The notes under the pieces are model-generated. The model was not told the origin of the DNA and made no database searches. It saw nothing but the letters and a program-made list of their open reading frames with translations. The translations under genes and the position numbers were made by a program. From IMG/VR virus record IMGVR_UViG_3300042502_001233, positions 248,001-312,000 of that record: a stretch of 64,000 bases of DNA; one strand, 5' to 3'. Below, piece after piece: positions 4,069-23,404 of the stretch; position 1 is the first letter of the stretch, and each line of letters opens with the position of its first letter.

Positions 4069-4310
4069 GCCCCGTGGTCAGCCCAAAAATGGGGGTACGG
4101 AGGGAGGGGGGTAACGCCAGGATATACGTCCAGGGAGGGGTATGCAGGACTATCTCCAGCTTTAAGTATCTTATATCCATATACAACAAACGTGGTTTAA
4201 AACGTCTTATTTGCGGTCAAGTCAAATAAATGATATATGCAAATAAAGTTATTAACAATTTACATAGTTATTAACATTTGACAAAAACAAAAAAAGTTAT
4301 TAACATTTGT
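3975..4310. other. Non-coding boundary element: A/T-tract repeats, G-rich tract (4091-4140), three TTATTAACA repeats; candidate genome end or packaging region
   Basis: aaaattccccagaaaaattt / aaaatttccaggaaaaattt; gggggtacggagggagggggg...gggagggg. Confidence 0.45.
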
Positions 4311-4385
4311 TAATTTATAATCGTTTTACATAAACTTATTTGATATAAAAAAAGCTACTTTTAAGTAGCTTATTTTTTGTTAGTA

Positions 4386-4982
4386 TTAAATTGTAATACC
4401 TTGCATTTTTACTTCGGCTTTATCAAATATAAAAGTTCGATAGCTATCTTGTTTAAATTCGGCTAACTTTTTAATTTTGTTTTGTACAATTGTTAAATCA
4501 CGTGAATTAACTTTTTTGTACTCGATAGCTTGTAAGATAGTTTTTCTAACTACTAAGCCGTAAACGTGAATTTTCAAGCTATCTTTGTGTAATTTAACAC
4601 CTGTTGCTAAATTGATATAAGCATCAATTTGAGCATCACTTTGAGCTATGGTTTTATCTCCTTCGGCTCTTAATTGTTCTTTTGTCGTTTCATCGCTTAA
4701 ACGCTTGTTTAATGATGTTAAAACATTATCAAAAGCGGTATTTATTAACTCGATAGGATAAGACTTTTGCAAAGTTTCAATAATATCTTTTTTGTTCTCG
4801 GTTAAACTTTGTAAATCATCGTTTAAGATTTTTAAATAACTAACACCTGAATTGATAAGATAGTTACTTTTTTCGCCTTGCTTGTTTACATAATCACGAA
4901 CACCAACAAAATGATTATTTTTAATTTTTTTAGCTGTTACCAAAAGTAATGCGTTTTGTAAAGTTGTTTTTGTGTTTTCCAT
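4386..4982 (-). CDS. Hypothetical protein
   Basis: 198 aa ORF; upstream TAAATTTG box (caaattta at 5036-5043); hairpin terminator ~4349-4378. Confidence 0.75.
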   Translation of the reverse strand: MENTKTTLQNALLLVTAKKIKNNHFVGVRDYVNKQGEKSNYLINSGVSYLKILNDDLQSLTENKKDIIETLQKSYPIELINTAFDNVLTSLNKRLSDETTKEQLRAEGDKTIAQSDAQIDAYINLATGVKLHKDSLKIHVYGLVVRKTILQAIEYKKVNSRDLTIVQNKIKKLAEFKQDSYRTFIFDKAEVKMQGITI

Positions 4983-5170
4983 TTTTGTAAGAATTTTACG
5001 TTAAAATTGATTTTCTTTGTTCACTTTGAACACTGCAAATTTAGTCAAATAAGTTTATCCACAAAATTTTTTTACATAAACTTATCTGAAAAGTTATTAA
5101 CAATTTTGTTTTGTAGTGTTAATAACTTTTTTTGTATAAATGTTTGCATATATAAAATAAATTTATTATA

Positions 5171-5245
5171 CTACACGCGCACCCACACATAACGCGCATA
5201 CATACGCGCCCACGCGTTTACACACATACGCGCATGTGCAATACC
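5171..5245. repeat. Alternating purine-pyrimidine (CA/CG/TA) tract
   Basis: acacgcgcacccacacataacgcgcatacatacgcgcccacgcgtttacacacatacgcgcatgtgca. Confidence 0.7.
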
Positions 5246-5272
5246 TATATCGCGCGGACCAAACGGATAAGT

Positions 5273-8200
5273 TTATTTGTTTAGTTTACGTTTTACTTCA
5301 GATAGTTGGTCATAAGATAGTTCACTAAATCTATCTATTGGCAATTTATCCATATCGTGATTTAAAAGCAACGTAACACCTTTTAATTCTTCTTGGGTAA
5401 GTTCTTCTACTTGCCAACAATTATCTTCAAGATAGTTCTTTAAAATCGCTTGTTCATCTCGATGTACGTTTGTAAGGTTTACTAATAGTTTCATATAAGT
5501 TTATTTGGTTTGATATGCGCTCCCTCGGGAGCGCATGACACAAATGTGTACATAGGGTTATACTTCTTTCCAAAAACCATCAATTTGTGCAACCGTAATA
5601 GGTGTACCAAAAACTAAATCTTTGATGATATCTTGCTCTTGTAATTTAACAAAGTTTTTTTCTGCTTTCACAATATCTTTAGGTTCATAGTTGCCTTGCA
5701 TTGATGAATTGTTATTCATTATACCATAAACACCTATTTGGTATAATTGTGTTGCAAATGTAATTTTTTGCCCAGTTTCAACGTCAACAAATGAATGTGA
5801 TTTGTGATAAGTAAATTTTTTTAATTTTGCCATTGTGATATAAGTTTAATTGATTATTGAGTGCAAAGATACAACAATATTTGACATATACAAATTTATT
5901 TCGCGCATAGACGCAAATGTGTACATAAGGTTATGTGAATAGCATTTGCATTTCAACTGCTCTAAACCCTAACTCCAACGTTCGTTGTAACGTTGTAATA
6001 TCTTTATTAAGTTTGATTTTCTTATTGATTGATTTAATGCTTCTAACTACATTTCGCATAGTTTTTCTTGCTATGGTACGGCTACGTTTCTTATCGAAAC
6101 CAACATAGTTTCTTTCGTAAACGTGTGCATATCTACCATACGCTTTAAACTTATCCATATCAATAAGGCTATCCAAACTTTTCAATTGGTTTTCCAATCG
6201 AATTAAGTCTTGCTCGAGTGTTATATATAATACATTTTCCATATAAGTTTATGTGATTTTAATATAGTCGCCTTTGGCTAACCATATTTCCATTTCGCCA
6301 TAAGTTAAGATACTTTCCACTTTGCAAGTCATAACCAAATATGATTTATATTCGGGTTCTTTGCTTTTTTTAAGGCTTTTGCGTTCAATACTAAAGTTAT
6401 AGCTTTCAACAACTTTTTGGTACTGATACAACGCTGATTTGCCTTTAAGTTTGGCAACCAACACACCCTCTTTGGTTCTAAATTCTAATTCCATATAAGT
6501 TTATTTAGTCTACAATACCATTACCATAATACAAGTTGAAAGACTTGGCTTTGTAATCGTCAGACTGCAACCATTCTTTGTATTTTGTTTTTATTTGTTC
6601 GTCAGCAAAATCGTAATAGTGTCCGTTGCAATAACGTAACTGATTATTCTTTTTGTAGAATTGTTCAAATAAGTCTATGTCGTTTTCAGCAACAAGTGTT
6701 TCATTACGTTTAAATTCGGGTTTAGTATCTAAATATCTAAAACCACTTTCAGTAACAACTGATTTGTTTGCGGGTGCAAAGTAATTTAATGTAACTTCCA
6801 TTTTGATATAAGTTTAATTGGTTTCCGAGGACAAAGATAGACAAATAAAATAACCTACCAAACTTTTGATAGGTTATTTTTAAATTATTTTTAGATAAGT
6901 TTATTTACAATTACAAAACAAAATCGCCATTATTTCTGATAATGTTTTCACAAATAGCAATCAAACGTTCTTCATCGGTTTCATAGACAATATAAAATAC
7001 ATCTAATTTTGAACACAAAATACTTGATATATCAACAGAACGAATATATTGCTTTCCTTCAAACGCATATTCGATAATTGCTAATTGCTTAAGCGTAAAT
7101 ATTTCAAGCAATTTTTTGTGTGCTACATTATCCTCGTAAGTGCCTAAATAACAAGATTCGTTATAGTTATTTACTCTACCGACATAAGAAGCTAACAATC
7201 CACCTTTGGCACAAACCTCACAAGTAATGCTATTAACATTTTCTTTGTTTACATATGCATTTTGAGGCAATTTAATAATTCTATCTTTTTTCGGTTCTAA
7301 TAACTCTGCTTTGATTCTATCAATACAATCTTGGGCAACCATAACTCTTTTTTCAGCATTACTGCTATTGTTAAAAAGTTCGTTGGTTCTTTCAATTTTT
7401 TTTAGAAAAGCATTTTTTAATTTTTTGCTCATAATGATATAAGTTTAATTGATTTAACGTTGCAAATATAAAAAGAATAAATCATTCTACCAAACATTTT
7501 AACAAAAAAAAGCGTGGGTTTATCAAGTCCACGCTTTCCAACATTAATGTTTAACCAATTATCACTTACAAAATGTGATTTCTTTAAGGTTGCAAATGTA
7601 CAACATTTATTCTATATATAACAAATTTATTTTATAAAAGTTTTACAAGTCGGTTAATATACTTGTTATTCTCAACATACTTCTTTTTATTCTCGTCAAT
7701 CTTGACATCTAACTTTATGTTCTCGATACACAATTTATGATTTTCTTCGTGTTTACTATCGACAAGACTTTTTACCCTTGCAAATAGTTCTGAATAACCA
7801 TTAGCAAAATACAAATGAAACGTATCTTTAAAAAAACGTTGTCCGTTTTCTAAGGTTATTTCACGACTATCATCATACATAACCTTATATGGTTTTCCAA
7901 ATTCAAAACCATAATCGTCGGTTAATGAAATAACTTTTTCGTCAGTCAAATCCATATAAGTTTATTTGATTGGGTTATCTCTACGCCACTTTCTAATTGC
8001 ATCGGTCATTGAATAAAAGATATATCGCATACCTTTGATTTCAACAACGCCACTACGAAACTTATAAGCCGTAACTCCGTTTCTAACTTTTTTCTCTGCT
8101 ACGATTGGTGTAGCATCTAAATACATTGGATAACTCATAACGTATAAGTTTATTCAATTACTTCTACTATATTACAACAACTTGCAAGTTCATCAAGTGG

Positions 8201-9786
8201 TATTCTTTCTCGGTTGCTTGTTGAATAGTAACCTTGAAATTCATAACGCTTTACCCACTCTTGTAGCTTTTGTTCTGCTACTTCTCGACTTGGATAAATT
8301 TCTTCTCTACTGATAGCAAAGCCATCGGGACTAAAAACATCAAATTGTGGCATAATGATATAAGTTTAATTGGTTAACGAGTGCAAATATAATAAATTAA
8401 TTTTAAACTGCCAAACTTTTACCAATCAATTTTAATATCATATTCGCCTTGTTCAAGCAACCCTTTTTTACAAAGGTCGTTAGCTATCATTGAAGCGTGA
8501 GGATAAAAATTTCTTTCCCAAAACATATTGATATGTGATTTATCTTCTTTCCATTCTTTTTCATCCTTATCGGTTTTACCCCAATAGTAACCACATTCTT
8601 TTAGTTCTTCACTACTTGCGTTTAATGTTGCTTTAGGGTCTCTTTCAAGCCACGCTTTGAAACTAACCCCCATTTCAACCCCATTGATTACTTCGGGTAT
8701 GGTATCATTCTCATAATCATTTAATGACTTTTCCTCGGTTGATATGGTTTCAACCCCTCTTTGTTTACAATCATCTTGTTGTTGAAAAGAATAAACTTTA
8801 CCATAAGTTTTTTGTACTAAATTATCCCAATCTTGTACAGATATTTGTTTTCTTGTTTGAATATTCATAATATATTTAATTGGTTTAACGATGCAAATAT
8901 AAACAAAAAATCCACACTACCAAAAATAATGTGGATTTTTTTTTCATATAAGTTTATTCAGTTATTTCTTTAAAGACAAACCTTTGTGGTGGTGTATCTT
9001 CATCTAAATAAACTGCTTCCAAATAAACTTGTTCGTAAGTCAATCCAGCATAACAATTTTTTTGCGTTTCCAAATGAATTGGTGCAAACAAACTATCTGT
9101 ACCCTCTTTTACATTCATCATATGCTTAAAGTTCTTGTCAATGGTCTGCAACTGCCCATAAGGGTTTTCGCCATTGTAACGTTTTCCGTTCTCGATGTTT
9201 TTTGCGGTATTGCAAAACGTTGATGCGTGATAACCTATAACGCTTTCATCTGCAACACGTTTGTAAGCAACAACGTATTGAAATGGTTTTTGTTGGTTTT
9301 CTTCAAAGTTTTTACCCATTGCTTCCATTAACGCACCAACAACTTTTTTGGTTTCTTCGGGTGTTGGTCTTTGGTTTTCTTGTTCTGTATTCATAACGTA
9401 TAAGTTTATTTAATTAAATGTATTAATGTATCTATTCCACTTGCAACAACAACTCCGTTTACTTTGAATGTAATGTAACCCACTACAACCACGTTAGGCG
9501 CACCATAATTGTTTGAATTGTCTATGGTATAACCATAACCGATTGCGGTTATTGAATCACCCTTATTTACGTCTAAACTTATGTGTGATTGTTGTAAATA
9601 AGTAGTTGTGTTTTCTTTAGCATTGTAATACCAAAATTCGGGCGAATTACCCTCAATGAAAACTTCAAGTCTTTTGGTTTCTTCTTGGGTGTTTGGTGTT
9701 TCTTCTGAACTGCACGATGCAAATAAACTAATTAGAATAAGTGCTACTGCTAATAAGATTGCTTTGATAATTAATAATTTTTTCAT
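5273..9786 (-). CDS. Run of ~12 small early hypothetical genes (5273, 5558, 5931, 6249, 6505, 6911, 7632, 8150, 8419, 8954, 9406 lipoprotein, plus a short ORF near 7960-8138)
   Basis: Co-oriented ORFs, most with their own TAnnTTTG box; 9406 has a lipobox (LFASC). Confidence 0.7.
5860..5875 (-). promoter_or_regulatory. Example of the Bacteroidota sigma70-type -7 box TAnnTTTG(C), repeated upstream of dozens of minus-strand genes
   Basis: Plus strand gcaaagatac / gcaaatatac, also near 7462, 8383, 8893, 9815, 11287, 13361, 14481, 17205, 19139, 24263, 58712. Confidence 0.8.
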
Positions 9787-9867
9787 TTTGATATAAGTTT
9801 AATTGATTAACGATGCAAAGATATAAACAATTTTATTAACTACAAAGAAAAACTTTAATTATTTTGC

Positions 9868-9903
9868 AAAAAAAAAGAGAGTGTATGCACACACTCTCTT
9901 TTT
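9868..9903. terminator. Intrinsic terminator
   Basis: aaaaaaaagagagtgt-atgc-acacactctcttttt. Confidence 0.75.
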
Positions 9904-10129
9904 GGCTAGCTATTGTTTTCAGAAATTATCTGAGTCAGTCTTATGTTAATTTGTAAAGCATGAATAAAAAAAGCTTAAAGCTACCTAAAGGTTTTCTCTA
10001 CTTAACAACCATTGAATAAACTTATTCGGGTTGCATTAACAAGGCCTACATTAAATCCTATCTTGTTAATTTTTTTTTGTAAAGATAGGATTTTTTAATA
10101 TTTCGATATATTTATATATAAACAATATT

Positions 10130-10657
10130 ATGACTCCAGAAGAAAAAAAACAATACAAAGCCGAATATCGCAAATTAAATCGTGATAAAATCAATGAATA
10201 CAATAAAATGTATCGTGAAAAAAATAAAGAACGAGATAAGTCTAAAAAACAAGAATACAATAAAAACTATTCCCAAGGTTATAAAGAAACTAGAAATAAT
10301 CGATACAACGAGCGAATGAAGAACGACCCACTTTTTAACTTCAAACAAACCATACGAAATTTAATTAGAGTTTCTACCAAAAAAAATGGTTTTAAAAAAA
10401 TGTCTCGCACTGAACAAATTTTAGGTTGTTCTTATGAAGATTTTTACACTTATTTAGAATCTAAATTTGAATCGTGGATGACGTGGGATAATAAAGGGTT
10501 GTACAACGGCACCCCAAATTATGGTTGGGATATTGACCATATTATCCCAACATCAACTGCAACGACTGAAATTGAAATTATGAAATTAAACCATTACACA
10601 AATTTACAACCATTGTGTAGTTATTATAATCGTGATATTAAAAAAGATAATATTTAG
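10130..10657 (+). CDS. HNH homing endonuclease (opposite strand to its neighbours)
   Basis: ILGCS...WMTWDN.G...WDIDHIIP...NHYTNLQPLC. Confidence 0.85.
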   Translation: MTPEEKKQYKAEYRKLNRDKINEYNKMYREKNKERDKSKKQEYNKNYSQGYKETRNNRYNERMKNDPLFNFKQTIRNLIRVSTKKNGFKKMSRTEQILGCSYEDFYTYLESKFESWMTWDNKGLYNGTPNYGWDIDHIIPTSTATTEIEIMKLNHYTNLQPLCSYYNRDIKKDNI

Positions 10658-10745
10658 ACAAGCAAGGATTCAAAAATAGGCTTTGGCTTTAAACATAAAA
10701 ATACACATATACAAAGAAATGTATGTTGAATGATAACAAATAAGT

Positions 10746-12646
10746 TTATTCATTATCAGAATTATAGTAACCAACATAATTTTCCTCTTTACGCAAAAAT
10801 GGTTTCATCTTTTTAATGATTTCAACCTTTGCGTTTGTTGGAAATTTATGTACCAACAATTTTTCAATTACCTCTAAAATAGGTGTGTTGGTTGTTGTAT
10901 CATCAAATTTCATTCTAACATTGATACTCCAATCTTTTGGAATACTGCCGTGATTACGTTCACTAACTTTGGCTCTTTTTAAGCCACGTTCAATAGCAAT
11001 TATTGGTGTTTGATACACATCAACTTCATCATCGTACCAATCGATTTCATCAAAGTAAACACGCATTGAAAGTAGTTTCTTGGTTCTTATGGATTTCCAA
11101 AACTGCTCAACTTCGTTTCTAAGTTTATCTTCGTTAACATATAGTTGTGATTTTCTACTACTATAAGCATAATCGCTACTAACTTCTATTGAAATGGTAT
11201 TATCGGAATTTCTGCCTAAGTTTATTTCAAGGCAATCTTTGGTAAATTGTGAGTTCATAAGAATAATGTATTAATTGTTTCCGAGTGCAAAGATATACAA
11301 AGATTTTTAATATGCAAACATTTTAACAAAAAAAATAAGGTACTAATTTTTTTAGTCAGTACCTTATTATTTAAAGCGTATAAACTTATTTAAAATTCAC
11401 GTTGTTCTAATTCTATTGTTATCTCATCTAACTCCAATCTGAAAAAGTCAGTTAAGATATGTGGAATAAGTTTAGTTAGAAATTGTTTGTAAACTTCATA
11501 ATTTTGTGCTTTGCTTTTTACAAAATAGTAACTCGTTTCATAGTTGCCACTAAAATAGCTATGGTTAGTTTCTTCGTGTTGTTTATAACCTTGCATAAGG
11601 TTATTTACTTTCACTTTGTATTGCCCTATATGAATACTCGTGCTTATTCTTGTTTTGGTGTTGTGATGAAAAGAAACTCTTAACGTTTTGGTTTCTTTTA
11701 ATAGTTTAAGGTCAGGTTCAGCAAACATTGTGAAACTGCTAACCATTGGTGTTGGTACTTCTACTAAATTTACTTTCATTGTGATATAAGTTTAATTGGT
11801 TTCAGTTGCAAATGTAAAACAAATAAACCACAATACCAAAAATAATCATAAAAATAATCAAAAAATTTATTATAAATTTAAAAAGTTTTCTAAATGCTAA
11901 ACTAAATAGCATATCTATTTCATTATTTACCATATAAGTTTATTTGATTTTAGTAGGGTCTAACAACACTTCGCCATCAATCGTAAAGTCAGCGCCACAA
12001 TCATCGCAACATAACATTGTATCGTTTTCCATTTCAAATTTACCCTCTAACGTATGTTGGTGAACTCCCTCGCCCAACAAAATTGTTTTTCTTGTTTGTA
12101 ACATAAGATTATTGTTTAATTGATTATTATTTTGCAAATGTACGATATTAATTTATATCTACCAAATTTTTATTTAACTTTTTTTGAAACTTCAATACAA
12201 CTCATATCAAAATCTTTGTCGTGTTCAAACACAACTTTTTGAATATTGTTATAAGCTGGGTGATTACGATGCCTAAATTCCGAAATAAGTTTATCCCCAC
12301 TCTTGTACGTTCCAAGATACTGCCAACTTTCACCATTGTTAAGTGCTACGTTAGGTTCTTCAATGTTTTCATTGATTGGGTGATTGGATAACTTATCCCA
12401 TAAGTTTATCCATTCTTGACTATCTCTCTTTATAATAACAAAATCCATATAAGTTTATTCTTTTAACCAATGCGTTACAATTTGATTGCTTACATTGAAA
12501 CTACTTTTTTCTTTACCAGTCTGTTTGTCTTTGGTGATAGAAAATGTAGCATCAAGTCTATGTACGTACCCCATACTTGTTTTGGTTCTTACAAGATATT
12601 TTCCTGCAACGCTAGGTTTCTCAATAGTAATATCAATCCATTCCAT
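10746..12646 (-). CDS. Small early hypothetical genes (10746, 11390, 11940, 12170, 12455)
   Basis: ORF track; 12455 probably starts at MEWIDIT (12646). Confidence 0.65.
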
Positions 12647-12764
12647 AGTAAATACTTTAAATAAGTTTAATTGTTGGTGCAAATATAAGAAAACATTTTG
12701 AATAAAAAAAGAAAAAGGACAAAAATTTTCATCTTTGCCCTTGTTCAACCAATTAAACCAATCA

Positions 12765-13331
12765 CTACCAACTTGAACGATAGAAAATTGTTTGGGTTTT
12801 AAAGTCCGTTTCGTTTAGGACTTTAGATATTATCTCAATGGTTTCTTCAATATCTTGAAAATACCATTCGTTAAATTCAGTTCCACCAAAAAAGAAACCA
12901 CTTGTCGTTGGCAAAATTTCTTCACAACCTTTGCCTTGTATAATTCCGTCATTCAAATAAACTTCTTTGAGTGCCAATGCTTGTTTGCATAACGACATAA
13001 GTTTATTTAGTTTTTCTTGGCTAACTTTTGTTAACTGACATTCGTCTATACCACCTTGACATTCTTGTACAAAGTACGTGTGTATTTGATTGGCTTTACG
13101 CCAATATCCAATATCCTCAAAGATTGATAACCAAGTGGAATATTTGCCACGTTCTTTGACCACTTCATCTAATTGTGAATAAGCTTGTTTACTTCTACCT
13201 TTGATACTTTTACGAACTGACTTAAAAGCTTCTTTAGGTACGTCGCTAATAGTGTTATCCACTTTGCTATAATCGTCAGCAGTAAGTCCTTTGACTTTTT
13301 TAGAGCGGTATAAATATTGGTCAAGACCCAT
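12765..13331 (-). CDS. Conserved phage hypothetical protein (MGLD.Y...YWRKAN.IH...GFFFG...Y.SSW type)
   Basis: Recognisable motif set common in phages. Confidence 0.75.
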   Translation of the reverse strand: MGLDQYLYRSKKVKGLTADDYSKVDNTISDVPKEAFKSVRKSIKGRSKQAYSQLDEVVKERGKYSTWLSIFEDIGYWRKANQIHTYFVQECQGGIDECQLTKVSQEKLNKLMSLCKQALALKEVYLNDGIIQGKGCEEILPTTSGFFFGGTEFNEWYFQDIEETIEIISKVLNETDFKTQTIFYRSSW

Positions 13332-13393
13332 AATATAATAATTTTAATTGTTTTACGATGCAAATATATAATATTAATTTTAAACTACCAAAT

Positions 13394-14095
13394 TTATTTA
13401 AAACATTCTGTTGAACTACCATTAAATTTTAATAGCGGTACGTACCTATTTTTGCTTTTTAATCTTTTAAATCTTTTTTCTAAATCCCATATATAAGCTA
13501 AGTCGTTTGATACAACTTCTTTTATTATCTCAAATTTATACGGCATATGTTCTTTATGTGAATAACGTTTCTTTGTTGTTGTAGAAGTTATCCCAAACTT
13601 ATAAAACTCTTCCGTATCGTTGTAACATTTGATAATGTAAAAAACACCTTGCCTACCTTTGGCTTTAGCAATCCAATCATTTTTTTTAAGTGTGCTATAC
13701 ATATATCCGCATTCCCTACAACCTTGTTTATTTGTTGTGTGTGAAGCAGCTTTAATATCAAACTCACCATGAATAGGACAAACAATTTTAACTTTGTTTC
13801 TAGCGGTAGTGTATTCAGTTTTGGTATAATCGTATTTATCACCATGAACATCTTTAGCTTGTTGGATAAACTTATTTGTTTCACTTCTGCGATTATCTCT
13901 ATTAATGTAACCACATTGTTTGCAACCTTGTCCCTCCCAATGGTTTTTTGGTGATATAGTAAAATCACCATGCAATTTGCACGTTACTATAATATTAACA
14001 CGTTTATTAACGTATTCGGTTTTAGAATAGTCGTACTTATCACCATGAATAAGTTTAGCTCGTTTTAATAGTTCAATTGTATCTAATTTTTTCAT
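13394..14095 (-). CDS. Homing endonuclease with CxxHG (DUF723-like) repeats and GIY-YIG-like C-terminus
   Basis: HGDKYDYSK...CPIHG repeats; FYII...YKFGIT. Confidence 0.75.
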   Translation of the reverse strand: MKKLDTIELLKRAKLIHGDKYDYSKTEYVNKRVNIIVTCKLHGDFTISPKNHWEGQGCKQCGYINRDNRRSETNKFIQQAKDVHGDKYDYTKTEYTTARNKVKIVCPIHGEFDIKAASHTTNKQGCRECGYMYSTLKKNDWIAKAKGRQGVFYIIKCYNDTEEFYKFGITSTTTKKRYSHKEHMPYKFEIIKEVVSNDLAYIWDLEKRFKRLKSKNRYVPLLKFNGSSTECFK

Positions 14096-14135
14096 AACAT
14101 ATATTTTATTATAAATATACGCTACGAATCAAAAA

Positions 14136-14153
14136 GTACATATCTAATCCCAT
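14136..14153 (-). pseudogene. Stranded 5' end (MGLDMY) of the 12765 gene
   Basis: ATGGGATTAGATATGTAC versus MGLDQY. Confidence 0.65.
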
Positions 14154-14163
14154 ATAAGTTTAT

Positions 14164-15351
14164 TTATAAAGCAGTTAAACTTGACTTAAACGATAACGTA
14201 TGTTTTTGAGTATGCTCTATTTCACGAGCCATTTTGTCTATATCTACCGAACGTAATTCATTTAACTTTTTAGTTATAGATAACATAATTTCGTTTTGTT
14301 CTTCAATAGAAAAATCACGTCTTAATAGATAAACTACTTTATTAACATATTCGTCTTTAATTTGTGGTTCTTGTTCCATAAGTTTATCCAACTTTTTAGT
14401 GGCTTTGTTTTTTAATGCAATAGTAATTAAAAATGCTTTTTTAATAAATGATTTCATAATATAGTTTTTAATTGTTCGGTGCAAAGATATACAAAGATTT
14501 TTAATATGCAAATAATTTAAAAAAAAAAGTGAGATAGCTTGCACTACCCCACTCTTCACACATTATGAATAAAAAATTAAAAAAAACTTATTTAGGTGAA
14601 ATCTGAAATCCCCAAGCCCAATGCCCGTTATCCAAATCCACAATTATTTTACGACCACTCGTAACTTTATCCCATAACACCTCGTTTACGAGACGACCAT
14701 GTTTAACCCCCTCTGCCTCGCATAAGGTTATTTCTTTTACTTTTGCCTCTTTTGGTTCGTCAATGCCCCAAGCACCACGCCAAATGACAGTGTCTCCTGT
14801 TTTTAATACATTTTCCATATTATAAGGTTTAATTGATTATGTTTGCAAATGTAAGAATTAAAATCGACACCCGCAAAAAATGATGCCGATTTTTTTTTCT
14901 ATATAAGTTTATTTGATTAACGTCGTTTTCTTTCACCCCACCCTTGGTCAGGGTCACCAAAACTTGGTTTGTCCAAATCTTCATAAGTTCCTTTGAAAGA
15001 TAGTGAAACTAATTTTAACGGATACTTTAGTTTCAATATATCCGCATCATAGCAACCAACATCAATACCCAACCCTCGGTTGTGGTCTGTATCTTCATCA
15101 ATCTCTTTCATAAGAGGATAATCACCGTCAAACTTCAACCCCTCTAGCTTATTCCAAAAAGCCAATAGTTCATACATATCATACTTAGGTTCACCATCTT
15201 CTTTGGTTCCCAAATAACCATAATCTTGATAAGTATCTTTTATAAACCCACCACCAAATTCTTGTGGTATCAAAAATTTAAACGACTTACCATAAGCTAT
15301 ATTTTCAACGTTTGTTAAATCATCTGCTTTATTCCAACTAAAACTTCCCAT
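14164..15351 (-). CDS. Three hypothetical genes (14164, 14588, 14917)
   Basis: ORF track. Confidence 0.65.
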
Positions 15352-15454
15352 AATTTTTTAATTTTAAATTCGGTACAAATATAAAAACAAAAAAGTGATA
15401 AAAAAAAACTTCTTACCACTTTTTTTTTTAAAAATTAATTCTTACGTTTGCAAA

Positions 15455-15814
15455 CTATAATTCAGCATCAAAATCACAACTGCCATTTTCTTTGATGCAG
15501 TCACGTATCTTGATACCTAACCCCAAGTCGGCATAGTCTGCCAACTCATCTTTGGTAACACCCAAAGCTTCGATATCTTTATCAGTATAACCATTTACGC
15601 TGGCAAAGAATTCATCCAACTTTTGTTTCTTGTCACCTAACTTTTCTTCGATGTTTGCAATTTCTTCTTCTACACTTTCCAAGTCTTCCTCCTAAAAAGA
15701 ATAGTTAATGTAGTTTGGCTCGTAAGCTTGACCACCAAATCTTTCTGCTGCTGTGGAGCTTTGAACAGCAAACCAGAATTTGCCCTCAATGTCTCCTGAA
15801 TAATACCTTCCCAT
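15455..15814 (-). pseudogene. Single gene (MGRYYSGDIEGKFWF...CDFDAEL) interrupted by an in-frame TAG at 15692-15694
   Basis: TCT TTT TAG GAG GAA GAC TTG GAA continues in frame into the 15455 ORF. Confidence 0.7.
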
Positions 15815-16050
15815 AATGATATGTTTTAAATTAGAATGCAAACATATAAAATCTTTTTTATATATGCAAATATTTTTTAAATATTTTTTACTGGTGCCTG
15901 CGCTACGCGGGGTTACACAAATGTGTACATGCGTGTCCGATGACCTAGCGGCACATAAGAAAGAGGGTCCCCGCAAAATATTTTTAATAAATAAGATAAA
16001 AACTTTACTTTTTATCTTATTACACTATATTTATTATAAACTAAATTTAT

Positions 16051-16221
16051 ATGAGAAAAAAATTAAATGAATCAGAAAAAAAGAAAAAACTAACTGTGAC
16101 AATTAATCCAGCGTTACATGATAAAATTAATACGTTACATAATAACGTATCAAAACACGTTGAGTGGTTAATTTATCAAGATTTACTAAAAAACAATAAC
16201 ATTAACGAAATGCCTTTATAA
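16051..16221 (+). CDS. Small ribbon-helix-helix-like protein overlapping the HNH start (TAATG)
   Basis: MRKKLNESEKKKNLTVTINPALHDKINTLHNNVSKHVEWLIYQDL. Confidence 0.55.
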   Translation: MRKKLNESEKKKKLTVTINPALHDKINTLHNNVSKHVEWLIYQDLLKNNNINEMPL

Positions 16222-16778
16222 TGACACCAGAAGAGAAAAAAGAAAAAAAGAGATTATATAATTTAAAATATAAAGAAAAAGCTAAAGAATACTATCAAGC
16301 TAATAAAGAAAAAATAAAAGAATATCAACAAAATTATAATAAAATTAATAGGAATTTGATAACAGAAAAACGAAAAGACTATTTGAAAGAATATCAAAAA
16401 ACGTACCAAACTGAATATCATAAAAATAGAAGGGAAAATGATATTCTTTATAGATTAACACTGAATATACGCTCACATATATCTCATTTGATTAAAAATA
16501 ATGGTTATAAGAAAACTGATAAAACAATAACGATACTTGGTTGTACTTTTGATGAGTTCAGAATTCATATAGAATCACTTTGGCAACCTTGGATGAATTG
16601 GGATAACTATGGAAACCCAAAAGATGGTATGTTAGAATATAATAAAACATGGGATATAGACCATATTACACCAACATCATCAGCAATAACAGAGGAAGAA
16701 CTAATTAAATTAAATCATTATACTAATCTTAAACCATTATGTAGTAAATTTAATAGACATATAAAAAGGGATAAATAA
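16221..16778 (+). CDS. HNH homing endonuclease, paralog of 10130
   Basis: ILGCT...WMNWDNYG...WDIDHITP...NHYTNLKPLC. Confidence 0.85.
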   Translation: MTPEEKKEKKRLYNLKYKEKAKEYYQANKEKIKEYQQNYNKINRNLITEKRKDYLKEYQKTYQTEYHKNRRENDILYRLTLNIRSHISHLIKNNGYKKTDKTITILGCTFDEFRIHIESLWQPWMNWDNYGNPKDGMLEYNKTWDIDHITPTSSAITEEELIKLNHYTNLKPLCSKFNRHIKRDK

Positions 16779-16836
16779 ACTTATCCCTTTTTATTCGAAT
16801 TAAAACATATTAGCATTATGAACTCTAATAATATTG

Positions 16837-18220
16837 TTAGTCTTTAGCTGCAAATAAATCAGCTAACGCTTTGATTTGTTTAATCTTTACTTTGACAGCT
16901 TTGGCTGTCATAAGATGAGCTGTTTCACTTTGATATCCATCCCAATAAGGTAAATGGATTAATTGTACTGGTTTAATAGCTGCCACCATGTATTCAGCAC
17001 TACCGTCAGCAACTGGAAAATGAATAACTTCTCCAACACATTCTTGGTCAGGGTTACGCTTAATGCACCAATCTTTTAATCTTGCTGTTAAATCAGCACA
17101 ATCTTTTTTGTATTGTTCGATATTTTCCCAATTAAATTCAGGTGCTTCGAATCCTTCTGGTAATGTATAAACTTTTGCCATTGTTATAGTGTTTAAATTA
17201 GAATGCAAATATAAAACATATATTTTAAATATGCAAATTATTTTTAATTAAAATCCTGAACCAATTTCCTGTGGCTCAAACAAACCCCACTTCTCCATAA
17301 GCTTATCCGTTATCTTAAGAGATTCATCTAAGAACCTAAGTTCCTTTTCAGTCTTGAGACCGAAATATTTTATAATTCCTTCTCTATCATTTTTTTCATA
17401 AACGATATGACTATGAATCAATTGTTTTGTTTCGATTGGAAGACTGGCGCACTCTGGCAAACCAGTCTTCATATAGTTATTTTTGTATGACATAAGTTTA
17501 TTTAGTTTTTATAGGTGACCTCCATTTTGGTTTTCAGGGTCACTGAATCCCCATTCGTCCTCATCGTCGTATAAGATAGCTTTATCCAACGCGTATCCAA
17601 CACGCTCGTTCAAGTCTTCATTCTCTATCAAGTAATCTTGAATATCGTCATCGCCAATTGAGTTGGGTACATCTACCTCAAATGCTACCTGTTTGCTGTA
17701 GTAACGTGTTACGGTTACTGTTACTTTACGTGTATCTGACATAAGTTTATGCGTTTTCATGTTCCTGTTTGGTTACGAAAGCCTCAAAGTCTACAGCGTT
17801 GCCGTCAAACAAAAGTCTACGTTTGTTGCTATATGAACCGTCTCTTTTTATATATCCAATCTCATAACACTTCAACGTTATTTGTTTGGTATCAAAGTCA
17901 ACCAATACATGGTACTCATACTCTTCACCAACATCTTTGGCGTTGTTTGAATAGATATAAAAACCACCTGCACTATCACCCTTGAAATGTGATATCATTT
18001 GCGCTGCGAAACATCCAGCACCATTAAACACTTTGCTTGTTTCGTTACAGCTGATACCATTAACCACAATACCTGACTTGATGAAATCTGCCAGTTCCTG
18101 TCCGTGACCGCTTGGGTATCCGTCAAATTGACGATACATAGTTAAAAGTTTCTCCTGTTTTTGTTTGCCGTTATCGTCGTTCCATACTTCGATAACTCTT
18201 GTTAATGAACGTGTTCCCAT
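16837..18220 (-). CDS. Four hypothetical genes (16837, 17248, 17509, 17747; the last probably starts MGTRS at 18220)
   Basis: ORF track; MGTR...Y...DGYP motif in 17747. Confidence 0.65.
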
Positions 18221-18376
18221 AATGAATATTATTTTAATTGTTAATTGAATGCAAATGTATGAATAAAATTTTACATAACCAAATATATACAAAGATTTTT
18301 AACCTGCAAACTTTTTTTAAACTTTTTTAATATTTTTTTATAGGGCCATATTGCAGGCCCCATAAAACAAATAAGT

Positions 18377-19108
18377 TTATTTGGTTTTGATTGCAAACCC
18401 ACTAGCAAAAGCCAATAAGTTTTTTTCACGACCACCTTTGCCAGTATTCTTTTTATACTTCAAACCGACAATAACGTTTTTTTCATCTAAAAAACGCAAA
18501 TCATCCAAATCACCGTTTATAACTTTGAAACCTTTGTACGTTTCAGGTAATTTGTCAAATACCATTGCAACATTAAACCCACGCTCCAATAAACCCATTG
18601 CTATAGTATCATTAGTTTCAGAACGTGAAAATGTTAAATGATAATTACTAGGTAACACTTTGTCAAAACGCAAATAGTTTTTAGTGTAATCGTAAAATTG
18701 TACATCAGGAAACAATTCGAAGATATTTTTACCGTCGAAGATTTTATACTTCTCATAAGGTAAATCACTAGTACCATTTAAACGAAATGTAACAATTGCT
18801 TTATCTTTGTTTTTATCGATAGCTTTTTGAACTTCACCTTTAAGCTTATTCAAAAAAGAAACCCTATCTTTGAGAAAAAATTCTGTTTTGTTTAATCGAC
18901 CCTGCATAACACTAGTATACATACCACCAAAGCCACTACCAACAAGACAACTATCTGCACACCCCTTAGAGGCGTGACTACATACGTTTATACCTTTGCT
19001 GTTTGCAGTGAACGGTGACATATACAATATGAAAGTCATATAGCCAAGCTTTTCACCTTTGATTGTTTTTGCATTGTTTGTACTCAATAACGGTTTTGTA
19101 AATTCCAT
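18377..19108 (-). CDS. Phage Gp88-like protein
   Basis: C.HAS.GC...CL, FRLNGTSD, QFYDYTK, YHLTFS, GD..DLRF motifs. Confidence 0.7.
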   Translation of the reverse strand: MEFTKPLLSTNNAKTIKGEKLGYMTFILYMSPFTANSKGINVCSHASKGCADSCLVGSGFGGMYTSVMQGRLNKTEFFLKDRVSFLNKLKGEVQKAIDKNKDKAIVTFRLNGTSDLPYEKYKIFDGKNIFELFPDVQFYDYTKNYLRFDKVLPSNYHLTFSRSETNDTIAMGLLERGFNVAMVFDKLPETYKGFKVINGDLDDLRFLDEKNVIVGLKYKKNTGKGGREKNLLAFASGFAIKTK

Positions 19109-19149
19109 AATAAAAATGTTTAATTGATTAATTCGAGTGCAAATATATG

Positions 19150-20025
19150 AATAGATTTTTAATATGCAAACTTTTACCTGGAAATTTTTATTTTTTTTTC
19201 AGGACCATACATATAAGCTTATACGTATATATTTCATTTGCGCATTGCTACACATTCTGTAGCATTCCGCAAACAGGATATACGGCCATGGCCCCAGCAG
19301 CCCGCTGCATCCTTCAGGCCAGAACCTTCACACATACATACATGTGATGACGCCAGCGCCAGCAAATATGCGGGTTAAGCTTTACCTCTTCAGGTCCCTG
19401 CAAAAATAATTGAAAAAAAGTATGCATGTTACTTGCATATGAAAAATCTCCATAGCACATTTGTCCCATGAAAATATCAGCACTGTGCAACAGCTGCACA
19501 ATACATCCCGCATTGCGGGACCAGATTTCTTTTGCCTATATGCAAATAAGTTTATTTGTTTTACCATCTCAGGCCATGCAGCGCCCGCTGCTCAAGATGC
19601 GCCCAGAATTCTCCATGGCGCCATAATCCCATCACCCGCGTGGGCTAGACACAAAAGTGTACATTCATGTCCGATGGCCATCATGGCCTAGCGGCACATA
19701 CAGGGTACCTTGCAATGCATAGTAGTTTAAAATTTTGGCTGAAAAAGTGGCGTGTGTTTTTGAAGGGGATAAAGCTTTCTTCCATATATCTTTTACGCCC
19801 ATAACTACCTCATAATCATCATTTCCATTTTTATGGGTGTGTTTTCAAGTATTTTTATTCGTTTTTACCATTTTTTTCCACATTTTACCACAAACTCCCA
19901 CGGGAATTGCTGCTTGTGCGTGTGGGTACATTTAGGAACGTATTAAAATACTATACATATATATTTTCATATGTATTATGAATGTATGTATATACGCATT
20001 CCATGTACACAAAAGTGTACATATA
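19150..20025. other. ~870-bp non-coding, locally GC-rich element with palindromes; second boundary of the early block
   Basis: No credible ORFs; tggcca/catg/tgca palindromes; ATGTACAC-AAAA-GTGTACAT at 20003-20022. Confidence 0.55.
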
Positions 20026-20936: not shown

Positions 20937-21023
20937 TTATCTTGCAATATATACTTTTTCAATGTATACCAGAACGTTGTACTGATAACCGTTGTATTGA
21001 TGATATCCTAATTTATCTTGCAT
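20937..21023 (-). CDS. Truncated YAR-array unit (28 aa, MQDKLG...YIAR)
   Basis: Manual translation; not in the ORF track. Confidence 0.5.
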   Translation of the reverse strand: MQDKLGYHQYNGYQYNVLVYIEKVYIAR

Positions 21024-21997
21024 AATATATTTGGTCTTTTAAATTACTTTCATAATAATAGCTTATCCATAAACCAAATTGTTCACCATTGATATAATTC
21101 CCTATATTGCATAGATTTCCATTTGTCCAATACCATTCCCACAATCCGTGGCGTTGGCTTCTTCTATATGGTTTTTTATCTTGCATGGTATTCATGTTGT
21201 TCTCTTATTTCTCTGTTGTATCTAAGCAACGGTCTATAGTATAGATATCCGTAAGGTTCATCATTTATGAAATGAGTTTGAAGGAATATGTCACCAGTGT
21301 TTGCTGCATGCCATCGCCAATATCCGTGACGTTCACCTTGTTTGTTTCTTGGTGTAATATCGTTATCTTGCATAGTATTCATAACTTATTTTTCCAGTGT
21401 GCCAATGGAATTCTTTATATCCAACACTTACACCATCTATATAGTTTTTTATATAGTATAGTCCTCCATTATCGTGATATACCATCCATTTTCCGTTGCG
21501 ATTTTTGTGTTCGTTTTTTTGGTTTATTTTATATTGCATGATATACTGTTTCTGAATATTTGCCACAATTAAATTCATAATACCCATGCAATTTTCCGTA
21601 GATGTAGTGCGATATACTTAATAGTTTTCCATTTGACCAATATATAACATGTTGACCAATTTGATTACCGTTTGCGTATGAGCCTTTATCGTGTAACTGA
21701 CCGTTATCATGATATCTTTCCCAATAACCGTGTCTTTGTTTTTGTTTGTTTCTTGGTGTGATGTCTTTATCTTGCATAGTATAATTCATTTCCTATGTGT
21801 TCACAAAACCCATATATTGTCCTATTTAACATATTGCATTTCAACGTTAAACTACCATCTTCTGAATATGATTCATAGGGTCCAACAACATCACTGTTAA
21901 CAAATAACCCTTTAAAATGTAGCGTTCCATTGGAATAATATACTTCCCAATACCCATGGGCTTGATTTTGATTGTTAAATGGTTTGTTATCTTGCAT
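21013..21997 (-). CDS. Five overlapping MORN-variant/YwqK-like paralogs (stops at 21013, 21176, 21363, 21529, 21767)
   Basis: MQD..P.N...HG.W..Y..NG.....Y.NG...G......YYAR pattern. Confidence 0.75.
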
Positions 21998-22163
21998 AGT
22001 ATTCTATTATTCCTGAACTATTATAATAACTCCAATGTTCAAAGTACCCAAATTCTTCTCCGTTTATGTAGTGACCTTTGTACCATAAGTTATTGTTATC
22101 ATGATGTACCACCCAATAACCATGGGGTTCTTTTTTTTCGTTATGGGGTGTCTTATCTTGCAT
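21987..22163 (-). CDS. YAR-array unit (58 aa, MQDKTPHNEKKEPHGYW...EYYAR)
   Basis: Manual translation; below the ORF-track cutoff. Confidence 0.75.
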   Translation of the reverse strand: MQDKTPHNEKKEPHGYWVVHHDNNNLWYKGHYINGEEFGYFEHWSYYNSSGIIEYYAR

Positions 22164-22329
22164 AGTACGTTCTTTCGTTTATATAGTTATCAGCTACTCG
22201 GTACCATATCCAACCACCTAGAACTTCACCATTGACAACGTTACCACATACACGGTATGTTGGGTTCCAGCTGGTATCCCAAAATCCATGGGCTTATCCT
22301 AATAAGTTAGTTGGTTCTTTATCTTGCAT
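22153..22329 (-). pseudogene. YAR-array unit with in-frame TAA at 22294-22296
   Basis: MQDKEPTNLLG*AHGFW...TYYAR. Confidence 0.7.
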
Positions 22330-22501
22330 AGTAAAAACTTGTTATTAATTCTTCTTTGACTCCATAGTGGGCGCTGTGTCCAAACATTCTACCATTGATA
22401 TAGTTATAGGTGTTGGACATATTACCGTTAGCCCAACGATATATCCATAGCCCATAGGCTGCACCTCTTTCGTTTCTTTTGTTTGTTTCTTTATTTTCCA
22501 T
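22319..22501 (-). CDS. YAR-array unit
   Basis: Ends FYYAR. Confidence 0.75.
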   Translation of the reverse strand: MENKETNKRNERGAAYGLWIYRWANGNMSNTYNYINGRMFGHSAHYGVKEELITSFYYAR

Positions 22502-22537
22502 AATAAAAAAGGGTAGCTAAACGCTACCCTTATTTGA

Positions 22538-22771
22538 TTAGTCCCAAGCGTTTTGTAGCTTTTTGGTTACTGGGTTCAACTCTTGTTGAACGTACTTGAT
22601 AACGTTAGGTGATTCGATAGCGATTGTTCCATGCTCTCCGTGCAAAACTTGGCTGTTTTTTCCAGCTTTGATTTTAAGAATGTTCTCATCGATTTTCTCA
22701 ACTTCTACAACGTTAGTCATTGTGTGCGTGTTTGTGCTAGGTTCTAGCACGATAGTCTTCTGATTTCCCAT
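22538..22771 (-). CDS. His-motif (H.EH) hypothetical protein lying within the array
   Basis: THTM...HGEHG...QQELNP; own promoter and downstream hairpin (22505-22532). Confidence 0.65.
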   Translation of the reverse strand: MGNQKTIVLEPSTNTHTMTNVVEVEKIDENILKIKAGKNSQVLHGEHGTIAIESPNVIKYVQQELNPVTKKLQNAWD

Positions 22772-22844
22772 GTTTTTTTATTTTTAAATGGTTTGTTATA
22801 ATTACAGTACAAATATACTACTTAATTTTTAATTGTGCAAATTT

Positions 22845-23404
22845 TTATCGACAAAAATAAAATTTATTACTTGGTAATTCTTTAAATGAGCGAGTTACTT
22901 CAGTATACCCATATGCTACTCCGTTAACATAGTGTGAAGTTTCCCATGGTCGCCCATCAACCCGATAGTCTTGAAATGGACCGTGTAGTTCTCCTTTTTC
23001 GTTTCTTGGTGATTTATCTCGCATAGTATTCCTCACTTTCTATATTGTTGGATTTGTTTCTCCAAATAAAATAACCGTATCCATCATCATTAAAATAATG
23101 ACCTATACAGAAAGCAACACCGTTGGACCAATAATCTTCCCAACGTCCGTGACGTTGGTATTTATCGTTAAGTGGTTTTTTATCTTGCATAATACTCTTT
23201 TACATAAAATGATTCACCATCTTCCTCATTTTCATAATATATGGAATAACCATATTCAACACCGTTAATGTTGTGGTCCATAAACCATATAGTACCATTA
23301 CCTAAATAACATATCCATTGACCATGTGGTTGTCCTTGTTCGTTACGTGGCTCTTGATTAACTGGCATAATAACTTTTATTTGTCGTTTTGTTTTATCAT
23401 ACAT
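22845..23404 (-). CDS. Three further YAR-array units (22845-23024, 23014-23190, 23180-23404)
   Basis: 23014-23190 translated by hand: MQDKKPLNDKYQRHGRW...EYYAR. Confidence 0.75.

What the first reader, a model, noticed from the sequence alone, without database searches (positions are those of the whole stretch)
4330..19560. About 35 copies of the quasi-palindrome ATAAGTTT(A)/(T)AAACTTAT concentrated in one 15-kb block
Seen (by-eye count): copies near 4330, 5049, 5077, 5267, 5495, 5840, 6243, 6495, 6808, 6895, 7439, 7956, 8144, 8360, 8948, 9400, 9793, 10016, 10740, 11380, 11786, 11934, 12284, 12400, 12449, 12661, 12997, 13866, 14154, 14378, 14903, 16776, 17492, 17741, 18371 and 19546, against only a handful in the remaining ~44 kb. 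Many form stop-start junctions (TAA-ACTTAT-ATG), but several lie inside CDSs or are inverted, so this is not only a translation signal. Inference: binding sites marking the first-injected or early DNA (protection, translocation or coordinated shut-off), or shuffling points for early gene modules.
Basis: partly seen in the sequence, partly recalled or inferred. Interest (0 to 1): 0.62.

Follow-up and report, generated by a model that had tools for sequence, protein, structure and literature searches.

The report
Repeated gene-junction connector in phage early block
A short sequence (TAAACTTAT) repeated about 45 times in one 15-kb stretch of a 362-kb lake-water phage is a standard connector between small early genes: it carries the stop of one gene, sits just before the start of the next, forms part of repeated promoter leaders, and often lies where related phages have gained, lost or swapped genes.

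Summary
AAACTTAT occurs 53 times in the window (10.8 expected). Forty-five copies lie in 4332-19553, out of 117 in the whole 362-kb phage genome, and 34 of the 45 are on the gene strand.

It is the core of a roughly 20-nt element at gene boundaries. Nine copies are stop-start junctions (TAA, 6 nt, ATG). Seven sit in the roughly 26-nt leader of Bacteroidota-type promoters, one precedes a start after a hairpin, and nine follow a gene end only.

Boundary copies are conserved between two phages that differ by 14% (17 of 20 against 35% expected). Copies inside ORFs are not (2 of 5).

Relatives are mosaics. Several indels are flanked by direct repeats of the motif or of the promoter cassette. One gene has a promoter leader in one phage and a gene-gene junction in the other, and the switch falls at the motif.

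More distant relatives keep the architecture but use other leader repeats.

Best reading: a start-associated junction element within PeSL-like mobile regulatory cassettes of a T4-type jumbo phage, in a host without Shine-Dalgarno sites. A dedicated binding factor is not excluded. The "first-injected DNA" idea has no support.

The parts
4332..19554 (-). The block: about 35 small genes, nearly all on the - strand and almost all ORFans, with 18-19 host-type promoters and 45 copies of AAACTTAT.
5840..5848 (-). Leader copy (class P). The arrangement is a -7 box TAnnTTTG, about 14 nt, CAATTAAACTTATATC, 3 nt, then ATG. The same arrangement occurs at 6808, 7439, 8360, 9793 and 11786. At 12661 the ATG is 14 nt further on.
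   Evidence: The transcription start is inferred 4-5 nt after the -7 box from PMC6847099.
6243..6251 (-). Stop-start junction copy (class I). The TAA of the upstream gene is inside or just before the motif, and ATG follows at 0 nt (6243, 6495, 7956, 11934, 12449), at +5 (8144, 9400) or overlapping at -2 (17492, 17741). Copy 5495 has a hairpin, then the motif, then ATG.
6895..6903 (-). Gene-end-only copy. A gene stop and the motif are followed by a hairpin or terminator and, in at least four cases, by a promoter whose leader carries the motif or a degenerate copy. The others are 5267, 8948, 10740, 14154, 14903, 18371 and 19546, plus 16777 on the + strand at the end of the + strand gene 16221-16778.
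6847..6880 (-). Stem-loop directly upstream of the promoter at 6832-6839. It is one example of the terminator-plus-promoter cassettes. Others are at 8905-8941, 12715-12742, 14524-14557 and 17255-17280.
5864..5871 (-). A -7 box (TAnnTTTG) of a Bacteroidota-type promoter. There are 18 in the block; the highest coordinate of each is 5871, 6839, 7470, 8391, 8901, 9823, 11295, 11816, 12142, 12687, 13368, 14489, 14853, 15383, 15846, 17213, 18259 and 19147. Fourteen of the 18 leaders share CAATTAAA.
5049..5085 (.). Inverted pair of motif copies (10-nt arms, 17-nt spacer) in the 290-nt spacer upstream of gene 4386-4982.
12285..12293 (-). Sense copies inside ORFs (8803, 11466, 12285, 12400, 12997, 14049, 14378, 18415). 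They are not preferentially conserved in the relative (2 of 5) and are probably incidental or transient.
5925..6256 (-). A gene cassette (gene 5931-6242) that is present here and absent from relative G001. It is flanked by 14-nt direct repeats, a one-mismatch motif at 5925-5938 and the motif at 6243-6256, and G001 keeps one copy.
8395..8869 (-). Gene 8419-8868, present here and absent from G001, flanked by two promoter-leader cassettes. The alignments overlap by 38 nt in G001.

Best explanation
TAAACTTAT is the core of a roughly 20-nt junction element (about AAAnYRAW-TAAACTTAT-nT[G/C]) that acts in the mRNA of an early, host-RNA-polymerase-transcribed block of small genes. The phage is a T4-type jumbo phage whose host (Bacteroidota, inferred) does not use Shine-Dalgarno sites.

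Within operons the element supplies the TAA stop of one gene and places the next ATG 0-6 nt after it. That arrangement allows tight translational coupling or re-initiation on an unstructured AU-rich stretch. At promoters the same sequence forms the 3' half of a roughly 26-nt leader.

Because the same 13-20 nt lies at many gene boundaries (half in this block), and because the terminator-promoter-leader cassettes are themselves flanked by it, recombination between any two copies adds, deletes or swaps a gene or a promoter cassette and still leaves a working stop-spacer-start junction. This is the behaviour described for PeSL cassettes of T4-type phages.

Shown here: the position and orientation of the copies, their conservation, their lineage specificity, and mosaic joints at copies. 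Inferred: the effect on translation, and the claim that recombination uses the motif as its homology.
For: Position: 26 of the 35 copies that are sense to a gene lie at gene boundaries, as 9 stop+start, 8 start-only and 9 stop-only copies. Nine of 10 tight promoter-less junctions carry the exact motif. Seven of 18-19 promoter leaders carry it exactly, and 14 of 18 share CAATTAAA. Outside the block, 1 of 433 genes has the motif upstream.

Host signals: TAnnTTTG -7 boxes with TTTG at -33, and start regions that are A-rich at -11 to -14 with A at -3 and no SD. These match the Bacteroidetes signals described in PMC6847099.

Selection: 17 of 20 boundary copies are exact in both phages at 14% divergence, against 35% expected (P = 7e-6). 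Copies inside ORFs are not conserved, 2 of 5. The immediate flanks are hypervariable, with 24-32% mismatches against 2-8% in the core. Motif start regions are as unstructured as other start regions, -2.2 against -2.8 kcal/mol, while random 50-mers give -5.3.

Recombination: 8 of 23 homology breakpoints lie within 15 nt of a copy, against 1.9 expected for random positions. Indels are flanked by direct repeats of 14, 15, 20 and 38 nt; the 14- and 15-nt repeats are the motif itself and the 38- and 20-nt repeats lie in promoter cassettes. Gene 6505-6801 has a promoter leader here and a gene-gene junction in G001, and the switch falls exactly at the motif.

Phage type: Gp23-type capsid protein, T4-like terminase, and a weak UvsX-like recombinase candidate.

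Relatives: the same block is found in at least 4 relatives.
Against: No expression data exist; no RNA run holds the sequence. Motif-bearing start regions score only at the 20th-30th percentile of the phage's own generic start-region model, and class I copies have T rather than A at -3, so the motif is not simply an optimal start context. Nine copies follow a gene with no start behind them, and relatives carry arrays of inverted copies in non-coding DNA; neither serves initiation. Breakpoints are not enriched at motif-bearing boundaries relative to other gene boundaries. Conservation could be partly due to homogenisation by recombination rather than selection on expression.
Confidence: 0.55

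Rival explanations
1. The motif is the binding or cleavage site of a dedicated phage factor that controls the whole block. The factor could be a DNA-binding repressor acting as a roadblock (like the stoperators of mycobacteriophage L5), an RNA-binding translational repressor (like T4 RegA), an endoribonuclease (like T4 RegB), or an antisense RNA made from the inverted arrays seen in relatives.
For: The exact word is confined to one block of about 35 genes and is oriented with transcription. It occurs at gene ends without a following start, and in non-coding arrays of 4-6 copies in G001, L170 and L180. The 16-nt consensus is a near-palindrome, perfect at 18371 and 19546. It is not an optimal generic start region. 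More distant relatives have a different leader repeat, as expected if a factor co-evolves with its site.
Against: No RegA or RegB homologue was found. The palindromic flanks show no covariation beyond base preferences. The 8-mer is not avoided elsewhere in the genome: 72 copies outside the block against about 58 expected. The window's own genome lacks the inverted arrays. The fixed phase with stop and start codons is not required of a protein site. No candidate factor was identified.
Confidence: 0.25
2. The motif has no role in expression. It is a linker kept only because cassettes flanked by it spread and are homogenised by recombination (concerted evolution of a mobile junction), possibly helped by the two homing-endonuclease-like genes in the block.
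For: Direct-repeat indels and a promoter-cassette swap occur at the motif. Leader repeats are lineage-specific in L182 and L189. Exact copies are concentrated in the left 8.5 kb, with degenerate copies to the right. An HNH gene lies at 13394-14095 and an endonuclease VII-like gene at 10130-10657, and the latter is absent from G001.
Against: Copies in the middle of long uninterrupted homologous stretches (for example 9400 and 8948) are also exact while their flanks diverge. The motif is always in phase with real stops and starts. Breakpoints are not enriched at motif boundaries over other boundaries.
Confidence: 0.12
3. The motif is the promoter, or start site, of a phage-encoded RNA polymerase that gives each small gene its own short-leader transcript.
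For: Jumbo phages often use short AT-rich single-element promoters just upstream of starts (background knowledge). The motif lies 0-6 nt before ATG.
Against: No match to RNA polymerase beta, beta-prime or T7-type families was found in the genome; this is weak evidence, because phage enzymes are divergent. Seven copies lie at a fixed distance downstream of canonical host promoters. Nine copies have no gene behind them.
Confidence: 0.04
4. The cluster is a chance or compositional effect, or a Chi-like protective word.
For: The region is AT-rich and the word is AT-rich. The strand bias resembles that of Chi sites.
Against: There are 45 copies against about 2.6 expected in the block, and composition is the same as elsewhere. 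The copies sit at gene boundaries, and copies inside ORFs are not conserved, which is the opposite of what is expected for Chi.
Confidence: 0.02

Closest known systems
PeSL cassettes (promoter-early stem-loop) of T4-type phages (Arbiol et al. 2010, PMC2839356; Comeau et al. 2014, PMC4122927)
   Same: Repeated cassettes of a strong host-type early promoter plus a stem-loop lie between small ORFan genes in a hyperplastic region of a T4-type phage. Indels and replacements between close relatives are bounded by the cassettes. Crossovers have been reported between the -10 box and the ATG, which is the leader, where this motif lies.
   Different: The promoters are of the Bacteroidota type (TTTG / TAnnTTTG), not sigma-70 type. 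The repeated word is not the promoter or the stem-loop but the leader. The same word also forms promoter-less stop-start junctions and flanks the cassettes as a direct repeat. Mini-circles were not tested.
Start-associated sequences (SAS) of Cluster K mycobacteriophages (Pope et al. 2011, PMC3203893)
   Same: A short asymmetric repeat, present in 11-19 copies, confined to the non-structural half of the genome, nearly all in one orientation, a few nt upstream of ATG starts, sometimes containing the upstream stop codon, absent from the host. Its function is unknown but is proposed to lie in translation initiation.
   Different: The sequence is unrelated: SAS is GGGATAGGAGCCC and contains a Shine-Dalgarno core, whereas this motif is AU-rich with no SD, in a host group whose ribosomes ignore SD. 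There are more copies here, in a much smaller region, and the link to mosaic joints is explicit.
Stoperators of mycobacteriophage L5 and Cluster A (13-bp repressor sites; cited in PMC3203893)
   Same: Many copies of an asymmetric short site lie in short intergenic spaces and are oriented with transcription.
   Different: Stoperators are bound by a known repressor of a temperate phage and are spread over the genome. Here no repressor is known and the copies are confined to one block and phased with start and stop codons.
T4 RegA and RegB targets in early mRNAs
   Same: Sequence signals at the translation start regions of many early genes allow a coordinated shut-off.
   Different: No RegA or RegB homologue was detected. 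T4 targets are degenerate (RegA) or are the SD tetranucleotide (RegB).

Membership tests
PeSL-type mobile regulatory cassettes | A repeated strong early promoter matching the host's primary sigma consensus | tested here: met
   There are 18 -7 boxes TAnnTTTG in the block, mostly with TTTG about 19 nt upstream, each 20-35 nt before an ATG. Twenty-five of about 49 full promoters in the genome lie at 240-280 kb. The consensus is taken from PMC6847099.
PeSL-type mobile regulatory cassettes | An adjacent stem-loop or terminator | tested here: met
   Terminator-like hairpins lie directly upstream of, or overlapping, the -33 element of at least 5 promoters (6847-6880, 8905-8941, 12715-12742, 14524-14557, 17255-17280). 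The scan found 14 hairpins against 6.3 expected. Not every promoter has one.
PeSL-type mobile regulatory cassettes | Location between ORFans in a hyperplastic region of a T4-type phage | tested here: met
   Gp23-type capsid protein with E = 6e-63 and a T4-like terminase. Of 30 block proteins scanned, 24 have no family match or match only families of unknown function.
PeSL-type mobile regulatory cassettes | Indels or replacements between close relatives are bounded by the cassettes | tested here: met
   Indels are flanked by 14-38-nt direct repeats of the motif or promoter cassette, and 8 of 23 breakpoints lie at a copy against 1.9 for random positions. There is no excess over other gene boundaries.
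PeSL-type mobile regulatory cassettes | Formation of circular excision products during infection | not testable with these tools
   This needs inverse PCR or long reads from infected cells. The contig data are uninformative because assemblies break at repeats.
Start-associated sequences (Cluster K SAS) | The 13-bp sequence GGGATAGGAGCCC with an SD core, in Cluster K mycobacteriophages | tested here: not met
   The motif here is TAAACTTAT with AU-rich flanks and no SD. The phage is a T4-type phage with Bacteroidota-type signals.
Start-associated sequences (Cluster K SAS) | One orientation, a few nt upstream of ATG starts, restricted to non-structural genes, sometimes holding the upstream stop | tested here: met
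   Thirty-four of 45 copies are on the gene strand. ATG lies at -2 to +6 for 16 copies and at +14 for one more leader copy. The upstream stop is inside or beside 18 copies.
Stoperator-type repressor sites | Binding by a phage repressor that blocks elongation | not testable with these tools
   No candidate repressor was identified. The flank-covariation test for a dimer site was negative.
T4 RegA / RegB regulons | Presence of a RegA (PF01818) or RegB (PF10715) homologue | tested here: not met
   No match in the 362-kb genome at E <= 1.

The most novel reading that the evidence does not exclude
The motif is a genuine cis-signal read by a dedicated factor, or by the ribosome itself. One version is an SD-independent termination-reinitiation or ribosome-recruitment signal that lets a phage translate strings of tiny early genes in Bacteroidota. 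The other is the target of a phage protein or antisense RNA that switches about 35 early genes off together; the arrays of inverted copies in relatives could be the source of such an RNA. Its role as a recombination joint would then be secondary.
Probability: 0.2. Interest if true: 0.75.

Novelty: new variant of a known kind. Interest (0 to 1): 0.45.

Why it matters
Translation initiation in Bacteroidota works without Shine-Dalgarno pairing and is poorly understood for internal genes of operons. A phage that uses one fixed stop-spacer-start connector for most tight junctions of an early block offers a compact sequence to test for coupling or re-initiation in that phylum.

It also extends the PeSL idea, in which regulatory cassettes act as linkers for modular gene exchange, to freshwater jumbo phages of a different host phylum. 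It shows a tidier design in which the linker itself carries the stop and the start, so any exchange between copies gives a working junction. The more distant relatives, with the same architecture but other leader repeats, suggest that these linkers evolve in concert within each lineage.

Tried and rejected
- Megablast of the block against named phages found no match.
- Rfam found only two tRNAs in the window.
The 17-mer leader scan was what found the relative G001.
- RegA, RegB, RNA polymerase beta, beta-prime and T7-type polymerase families gave no match in the genome.
- Palindrome hypothesis: the flanks are no more complementary than shuffled flanks.
- 'Optimal generic start region' hypothesis: motif start regions score below the median of the phage's other genes, and their folding energy is the same as that of other start regions.
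- Excess of breakpoints at motif boundaries over other gene boundaries: not found.
- RNA evidence: no RNA run holds the stretch.
- Laying contigs of four lake metagenomes showed loose ends and two low-support joints near cassettes. Short contigs break at repeats, so this is not independent evidence.
- The simple comparison of mismatch rates (4.9% in the core against 13.7% elsewhere) is biased by choosing sites that are exact in one genome. The symmetric test was used instead.
- Pairing of the motif with host 16S rRNA was not tested because the host is unknown.
Full report
**The observation.** AAACTTAT occurs 53 times in the 64-kb window, against 10.8 +/- 3.2 in dinucleotide-preserving shuffles. 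Forty-five copies lie between 4332 and 19553.
- The window is bases 248,001-312,000 of a 362,018-bp virus record.
- Genome-wide there are 117 copies, 45 of them in this 4.2% of the sequence.
- TAAACTTAT is the most spatially clustered 9-mer of the genome.
- Base composition does not differ from the neighbouring DNA.
- Thirty-four of the 45 copies are on the - strand, the strand of nearly all genes here.

**Anatomy.** Aligning the copies gives a longer consensus of about AAAnYRAW-TAAACTTAT-nT(G/C). The copies fall into clear contexts.
- Seven lie in the leader of canonical Bacteroidota-type promoters: TTTG, about 19 nt, TAnnTTTG, about 14 nt, CAATTAAACTTATATC, 3 nt, ATG.
- With transcription starting 4-5 nt after the -7 box, as measured in Flavobacterium johnsoniae (PMC6847099), the leader is about 26 nt and the motif occupies about +12 to +20.
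- Nine are stop-start junctions. The upstream gene ends in the motif's TAA, or a few nt before it, and the next ATG follows at 0, +5 or -2.
- One precedes an ATG after a hairpin.
- Nine follow a gene end with no start behind them. In at least four of these a hairpin and a promoter come next, and that promoter's leader again carries the motif or a degenerate copy. The terminator-promoter-leader cassette is therefore flanked by direct repeats of the motif.
- The remaining copies are eight sense copies inside ORFs, ten copies that are not sense to any gene, and one sense copy (5049) that forms an inverted pair with one of those ten (5078).
- Nine of the ten tight promoter-less junctions of the block use the exact motif. 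Seven of 18-19 promoter leaders carry it exactly, and 14 of 18 share CAATTAAA.
- Outside the block, 1 of 433 called genes has it upstream.

**Who and where.**
- The phage has a Gp23-type major capsid protein, a T4-like large terminase and a weak UvsX-like recombinase candidate. It is a T4-type jumbo phage.
- Its generic start regions have no Shine-Dalgarno motif. They are A-rich at -11 to -14 and have A at -3. Its promoters are TTTG/TAnnTTTG. Both are hallmarks of Bacteroidota (PMC6847099), so that host phylum is inferred.
- Runs that hold the sequence are lake-water metagenomes, and none is RNA.
- Full host-type promoters are concentrated at 240-280 kb of the genome.
- The block's proteins are almost all ORFans, plus two homing-endonuclease-like genes.
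- This is the profile of an early, hyperplastic region.

**Relatives.** A 119-kb viral contig (G001) has 52 of its 58 TAAACTTAT copies in a 15-kb block at its end. An 8-kb metagenome contig (L170) has 38 copies. Several short contigs and a 331-kb contig (L180) carry the same block.

The window and G001 are 76-92% identical in a mosaic of shared and unshared segments. Among motif sites in aligned DNA, 19 of 25 are exact in both genomes, where neutral decay at 14% divergence predicts 35% (P = 4e-5). For boundary copies the figure is 17 of 20; for copies inside ORFs it is 2 of 5. The core is an island of 2-8% mismatch between flanks of 24-32%.

**Mosaic joints.** Eight of 23 homology breakpoints lie within 15 nt of a copy, against 1.9 for random positions, and most of the others lie in the promoter cassettes. 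The clearest events are these.
- Gene 5931-6242 is present here and absent from G001. It lies between 14-nt direct repeats of the motif, of which G001 keeps one.
- G001 has an extra 233 nt between two copies where the window has one (6495).
- Gene 8419-8868 lies between two promoter-leader cassettes that overlap by 38 nt in G001.
- Gene 6505-6801 is preceded by a promoter leader here and by a gene-gene junction in G001, and homology switches exactly at the motif.

However, breakpoints at gene boundaries carry the motif no more often than gene boundaries in general (7 of 12 against 50%). The data show that copies are joints. They do not show that the motif is more recombinogenic than other boundaries.

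**More distant relatives.** Two large contigs whose PcfJ-like flanking gene is 37-40% identical (L182, L189) have the syntenic block of small genes, each with its own Bacteroidota-type promoter. Their repeated leaders are different: ACAAACAAACACTA in one, and ACCTATCAAAA or TCAAAGAAATCAAAATCAA in the other, where a stem-loop sits between -33 and -7. TAAACTTAT is absent. The architecture is general in this phage group, while the word is lineage-specific.

**What it is not.**
- It is not an optimised generic start region. Motif start regions score at the 20th-30th percentile of a model built from the other 433 genes, although they are as unstructured as other start regions.
- The near-palindromy of the 16-nt consensus reflects base preferences, not covariation.
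- No RegA, RegB or phage RNA polymerase family is detectable.
- The word is not avoided elsewhere in the genome.
- Rfam has nothing here.

**Interpretation.** The best-supported reading is a standard junction element of early mRNAs. It carries the stop, a short AU-rich spacer and the start, and so it couples translation of tiny genes in a host without SD-guided internal initiation. It also doubles as the leader of PeSL-like promoter cassettes. Being identical at many boundaries, it lets homologous recombination add, remove or swap genes and promoter cassettes without breaking expression.

This resembles two known systems. One is the PeSL cassettes of T4-type coliphages and vibriophages (PMC2839356, PMC4122927). 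The other is the start-associated sequences of Cluster K mycobacteriophages (PMC3203893). It is a member of neither by sequence.

The main rival is a site for a dedicated regulator (DNA, RNA or antisense). That rival is kept alive by the gene-end-only copies and by the arrays of inverted copies interleaved with hexamer repeats in G001, L170 and L180. The 'first-injected DNA' idea has no support.

**Limits.**
- There is no transcript or ribosome evidence.
- The gene calls are my own simple caller.
- The host is inferred from signals only.
- The contig-level read data are uninformative at repeats.
- The number of independent recombination events is small.

Noticed in passing
G000:C1:322,760-329,800 (L190 10760-17795), outside the window: The same phage genome carries a CRISPR array of about 30 repeats of 36 nt (beginning GTTGTGATTCC) with 30-nt spacers. 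The array degenerates towards one end. Next to it are genes matching Cas6, a Cas7fv-like protein and a 760-aa Cas3 HD-helicase, plus an unassigned 276-aa ORF. This looks like a compact type I system on a jumbo phage. Cas1 and Cas2 were not looked for, and the spacers were not searched.
   Followed up: partly
L045 5130-5400 (G001); L170 7700-7960; L180 2480-2700: Three relatives carry, at the edge of the block, arrays of 4-6 motif copies in the orientation opposite to the genes. The copies are 36-66 nt apart and interleaved with hexamer repeats (GGGTTC or GGATTC/AGATTC types), and no ORF is present. The window's genome has only single copies there (4332, 5078). Their function is unknown. They could be a decoy or antisense RNA, or debris of repeated cassette loss.
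   Followed up: partly
window 20945-23188, - strand: Eight tandem small genes all begin ATGCAAGATAA (MQDK...) and share a downstream HG.W-type motif. They form a paralogous family directly to the right of the block and do not carry the junction motif.
   Followed up: no
window 4248-4306 and 5093-5127: Five copies of the palindromic word GTTATTAACA flank the 198-aa gene 4386-4982 on both sides, and two of them form an inverted pair. They look like operators for a regulator, possibly the product of that gene, which matches no family.
   Followed up: no
window 5160-5260 and 5530-5560, 5900-5935: There is a GC-rich repetitive spacer of CGCGC/ACGCGC words in an otherwise 30% GC region. A second repeated gene-end element, TAACC(C/T)TATGTACACATTTG, follows the stops of genes 5558-5833 and 5931-6242.
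   Followed up: no
window 10130-10657 (+) and 13394-14095 (-): Two homing-endonuclease-like genes lie inside the block, one endonuclease VII-like and one HNH. The first is on the opposite strand and is absent from relative G001, as expected for a mobile insertion.
   Followed up: partly
window 15683-15700: The called TTG start of gene 15455-15682 is preceded by AGGAGG, a Shine-Dalgarno-like word. That is unusual in this genome, where start regions lack SD, and the start call may be wrong.
   Followed up: no
window 56704-56802 and 57591-57666, - strand: Two tRNA genes are present. ARAGORN could not assign an anticodon to one of them, and the other is 99 nt long by Rfam, which could mean an intron or a long variable arm. 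The genome holds many more tRNA-like words at 28-51 kb and 330-357 kb.
   Followed up: no
G000:C1:221,163-223,595 (L168 1-2433): The large terminase lies in an open frame of at least 811 aa. Residues 4-348 match T4-like terminases. Residues 323-790 match crAss-like phage terminases and regions annotated as thymidylate synthase or methyltransferase in other phages. This suggests an insertion (perhaps an intein or a fused domain) or a mis-joined frame.
   Followed up: no
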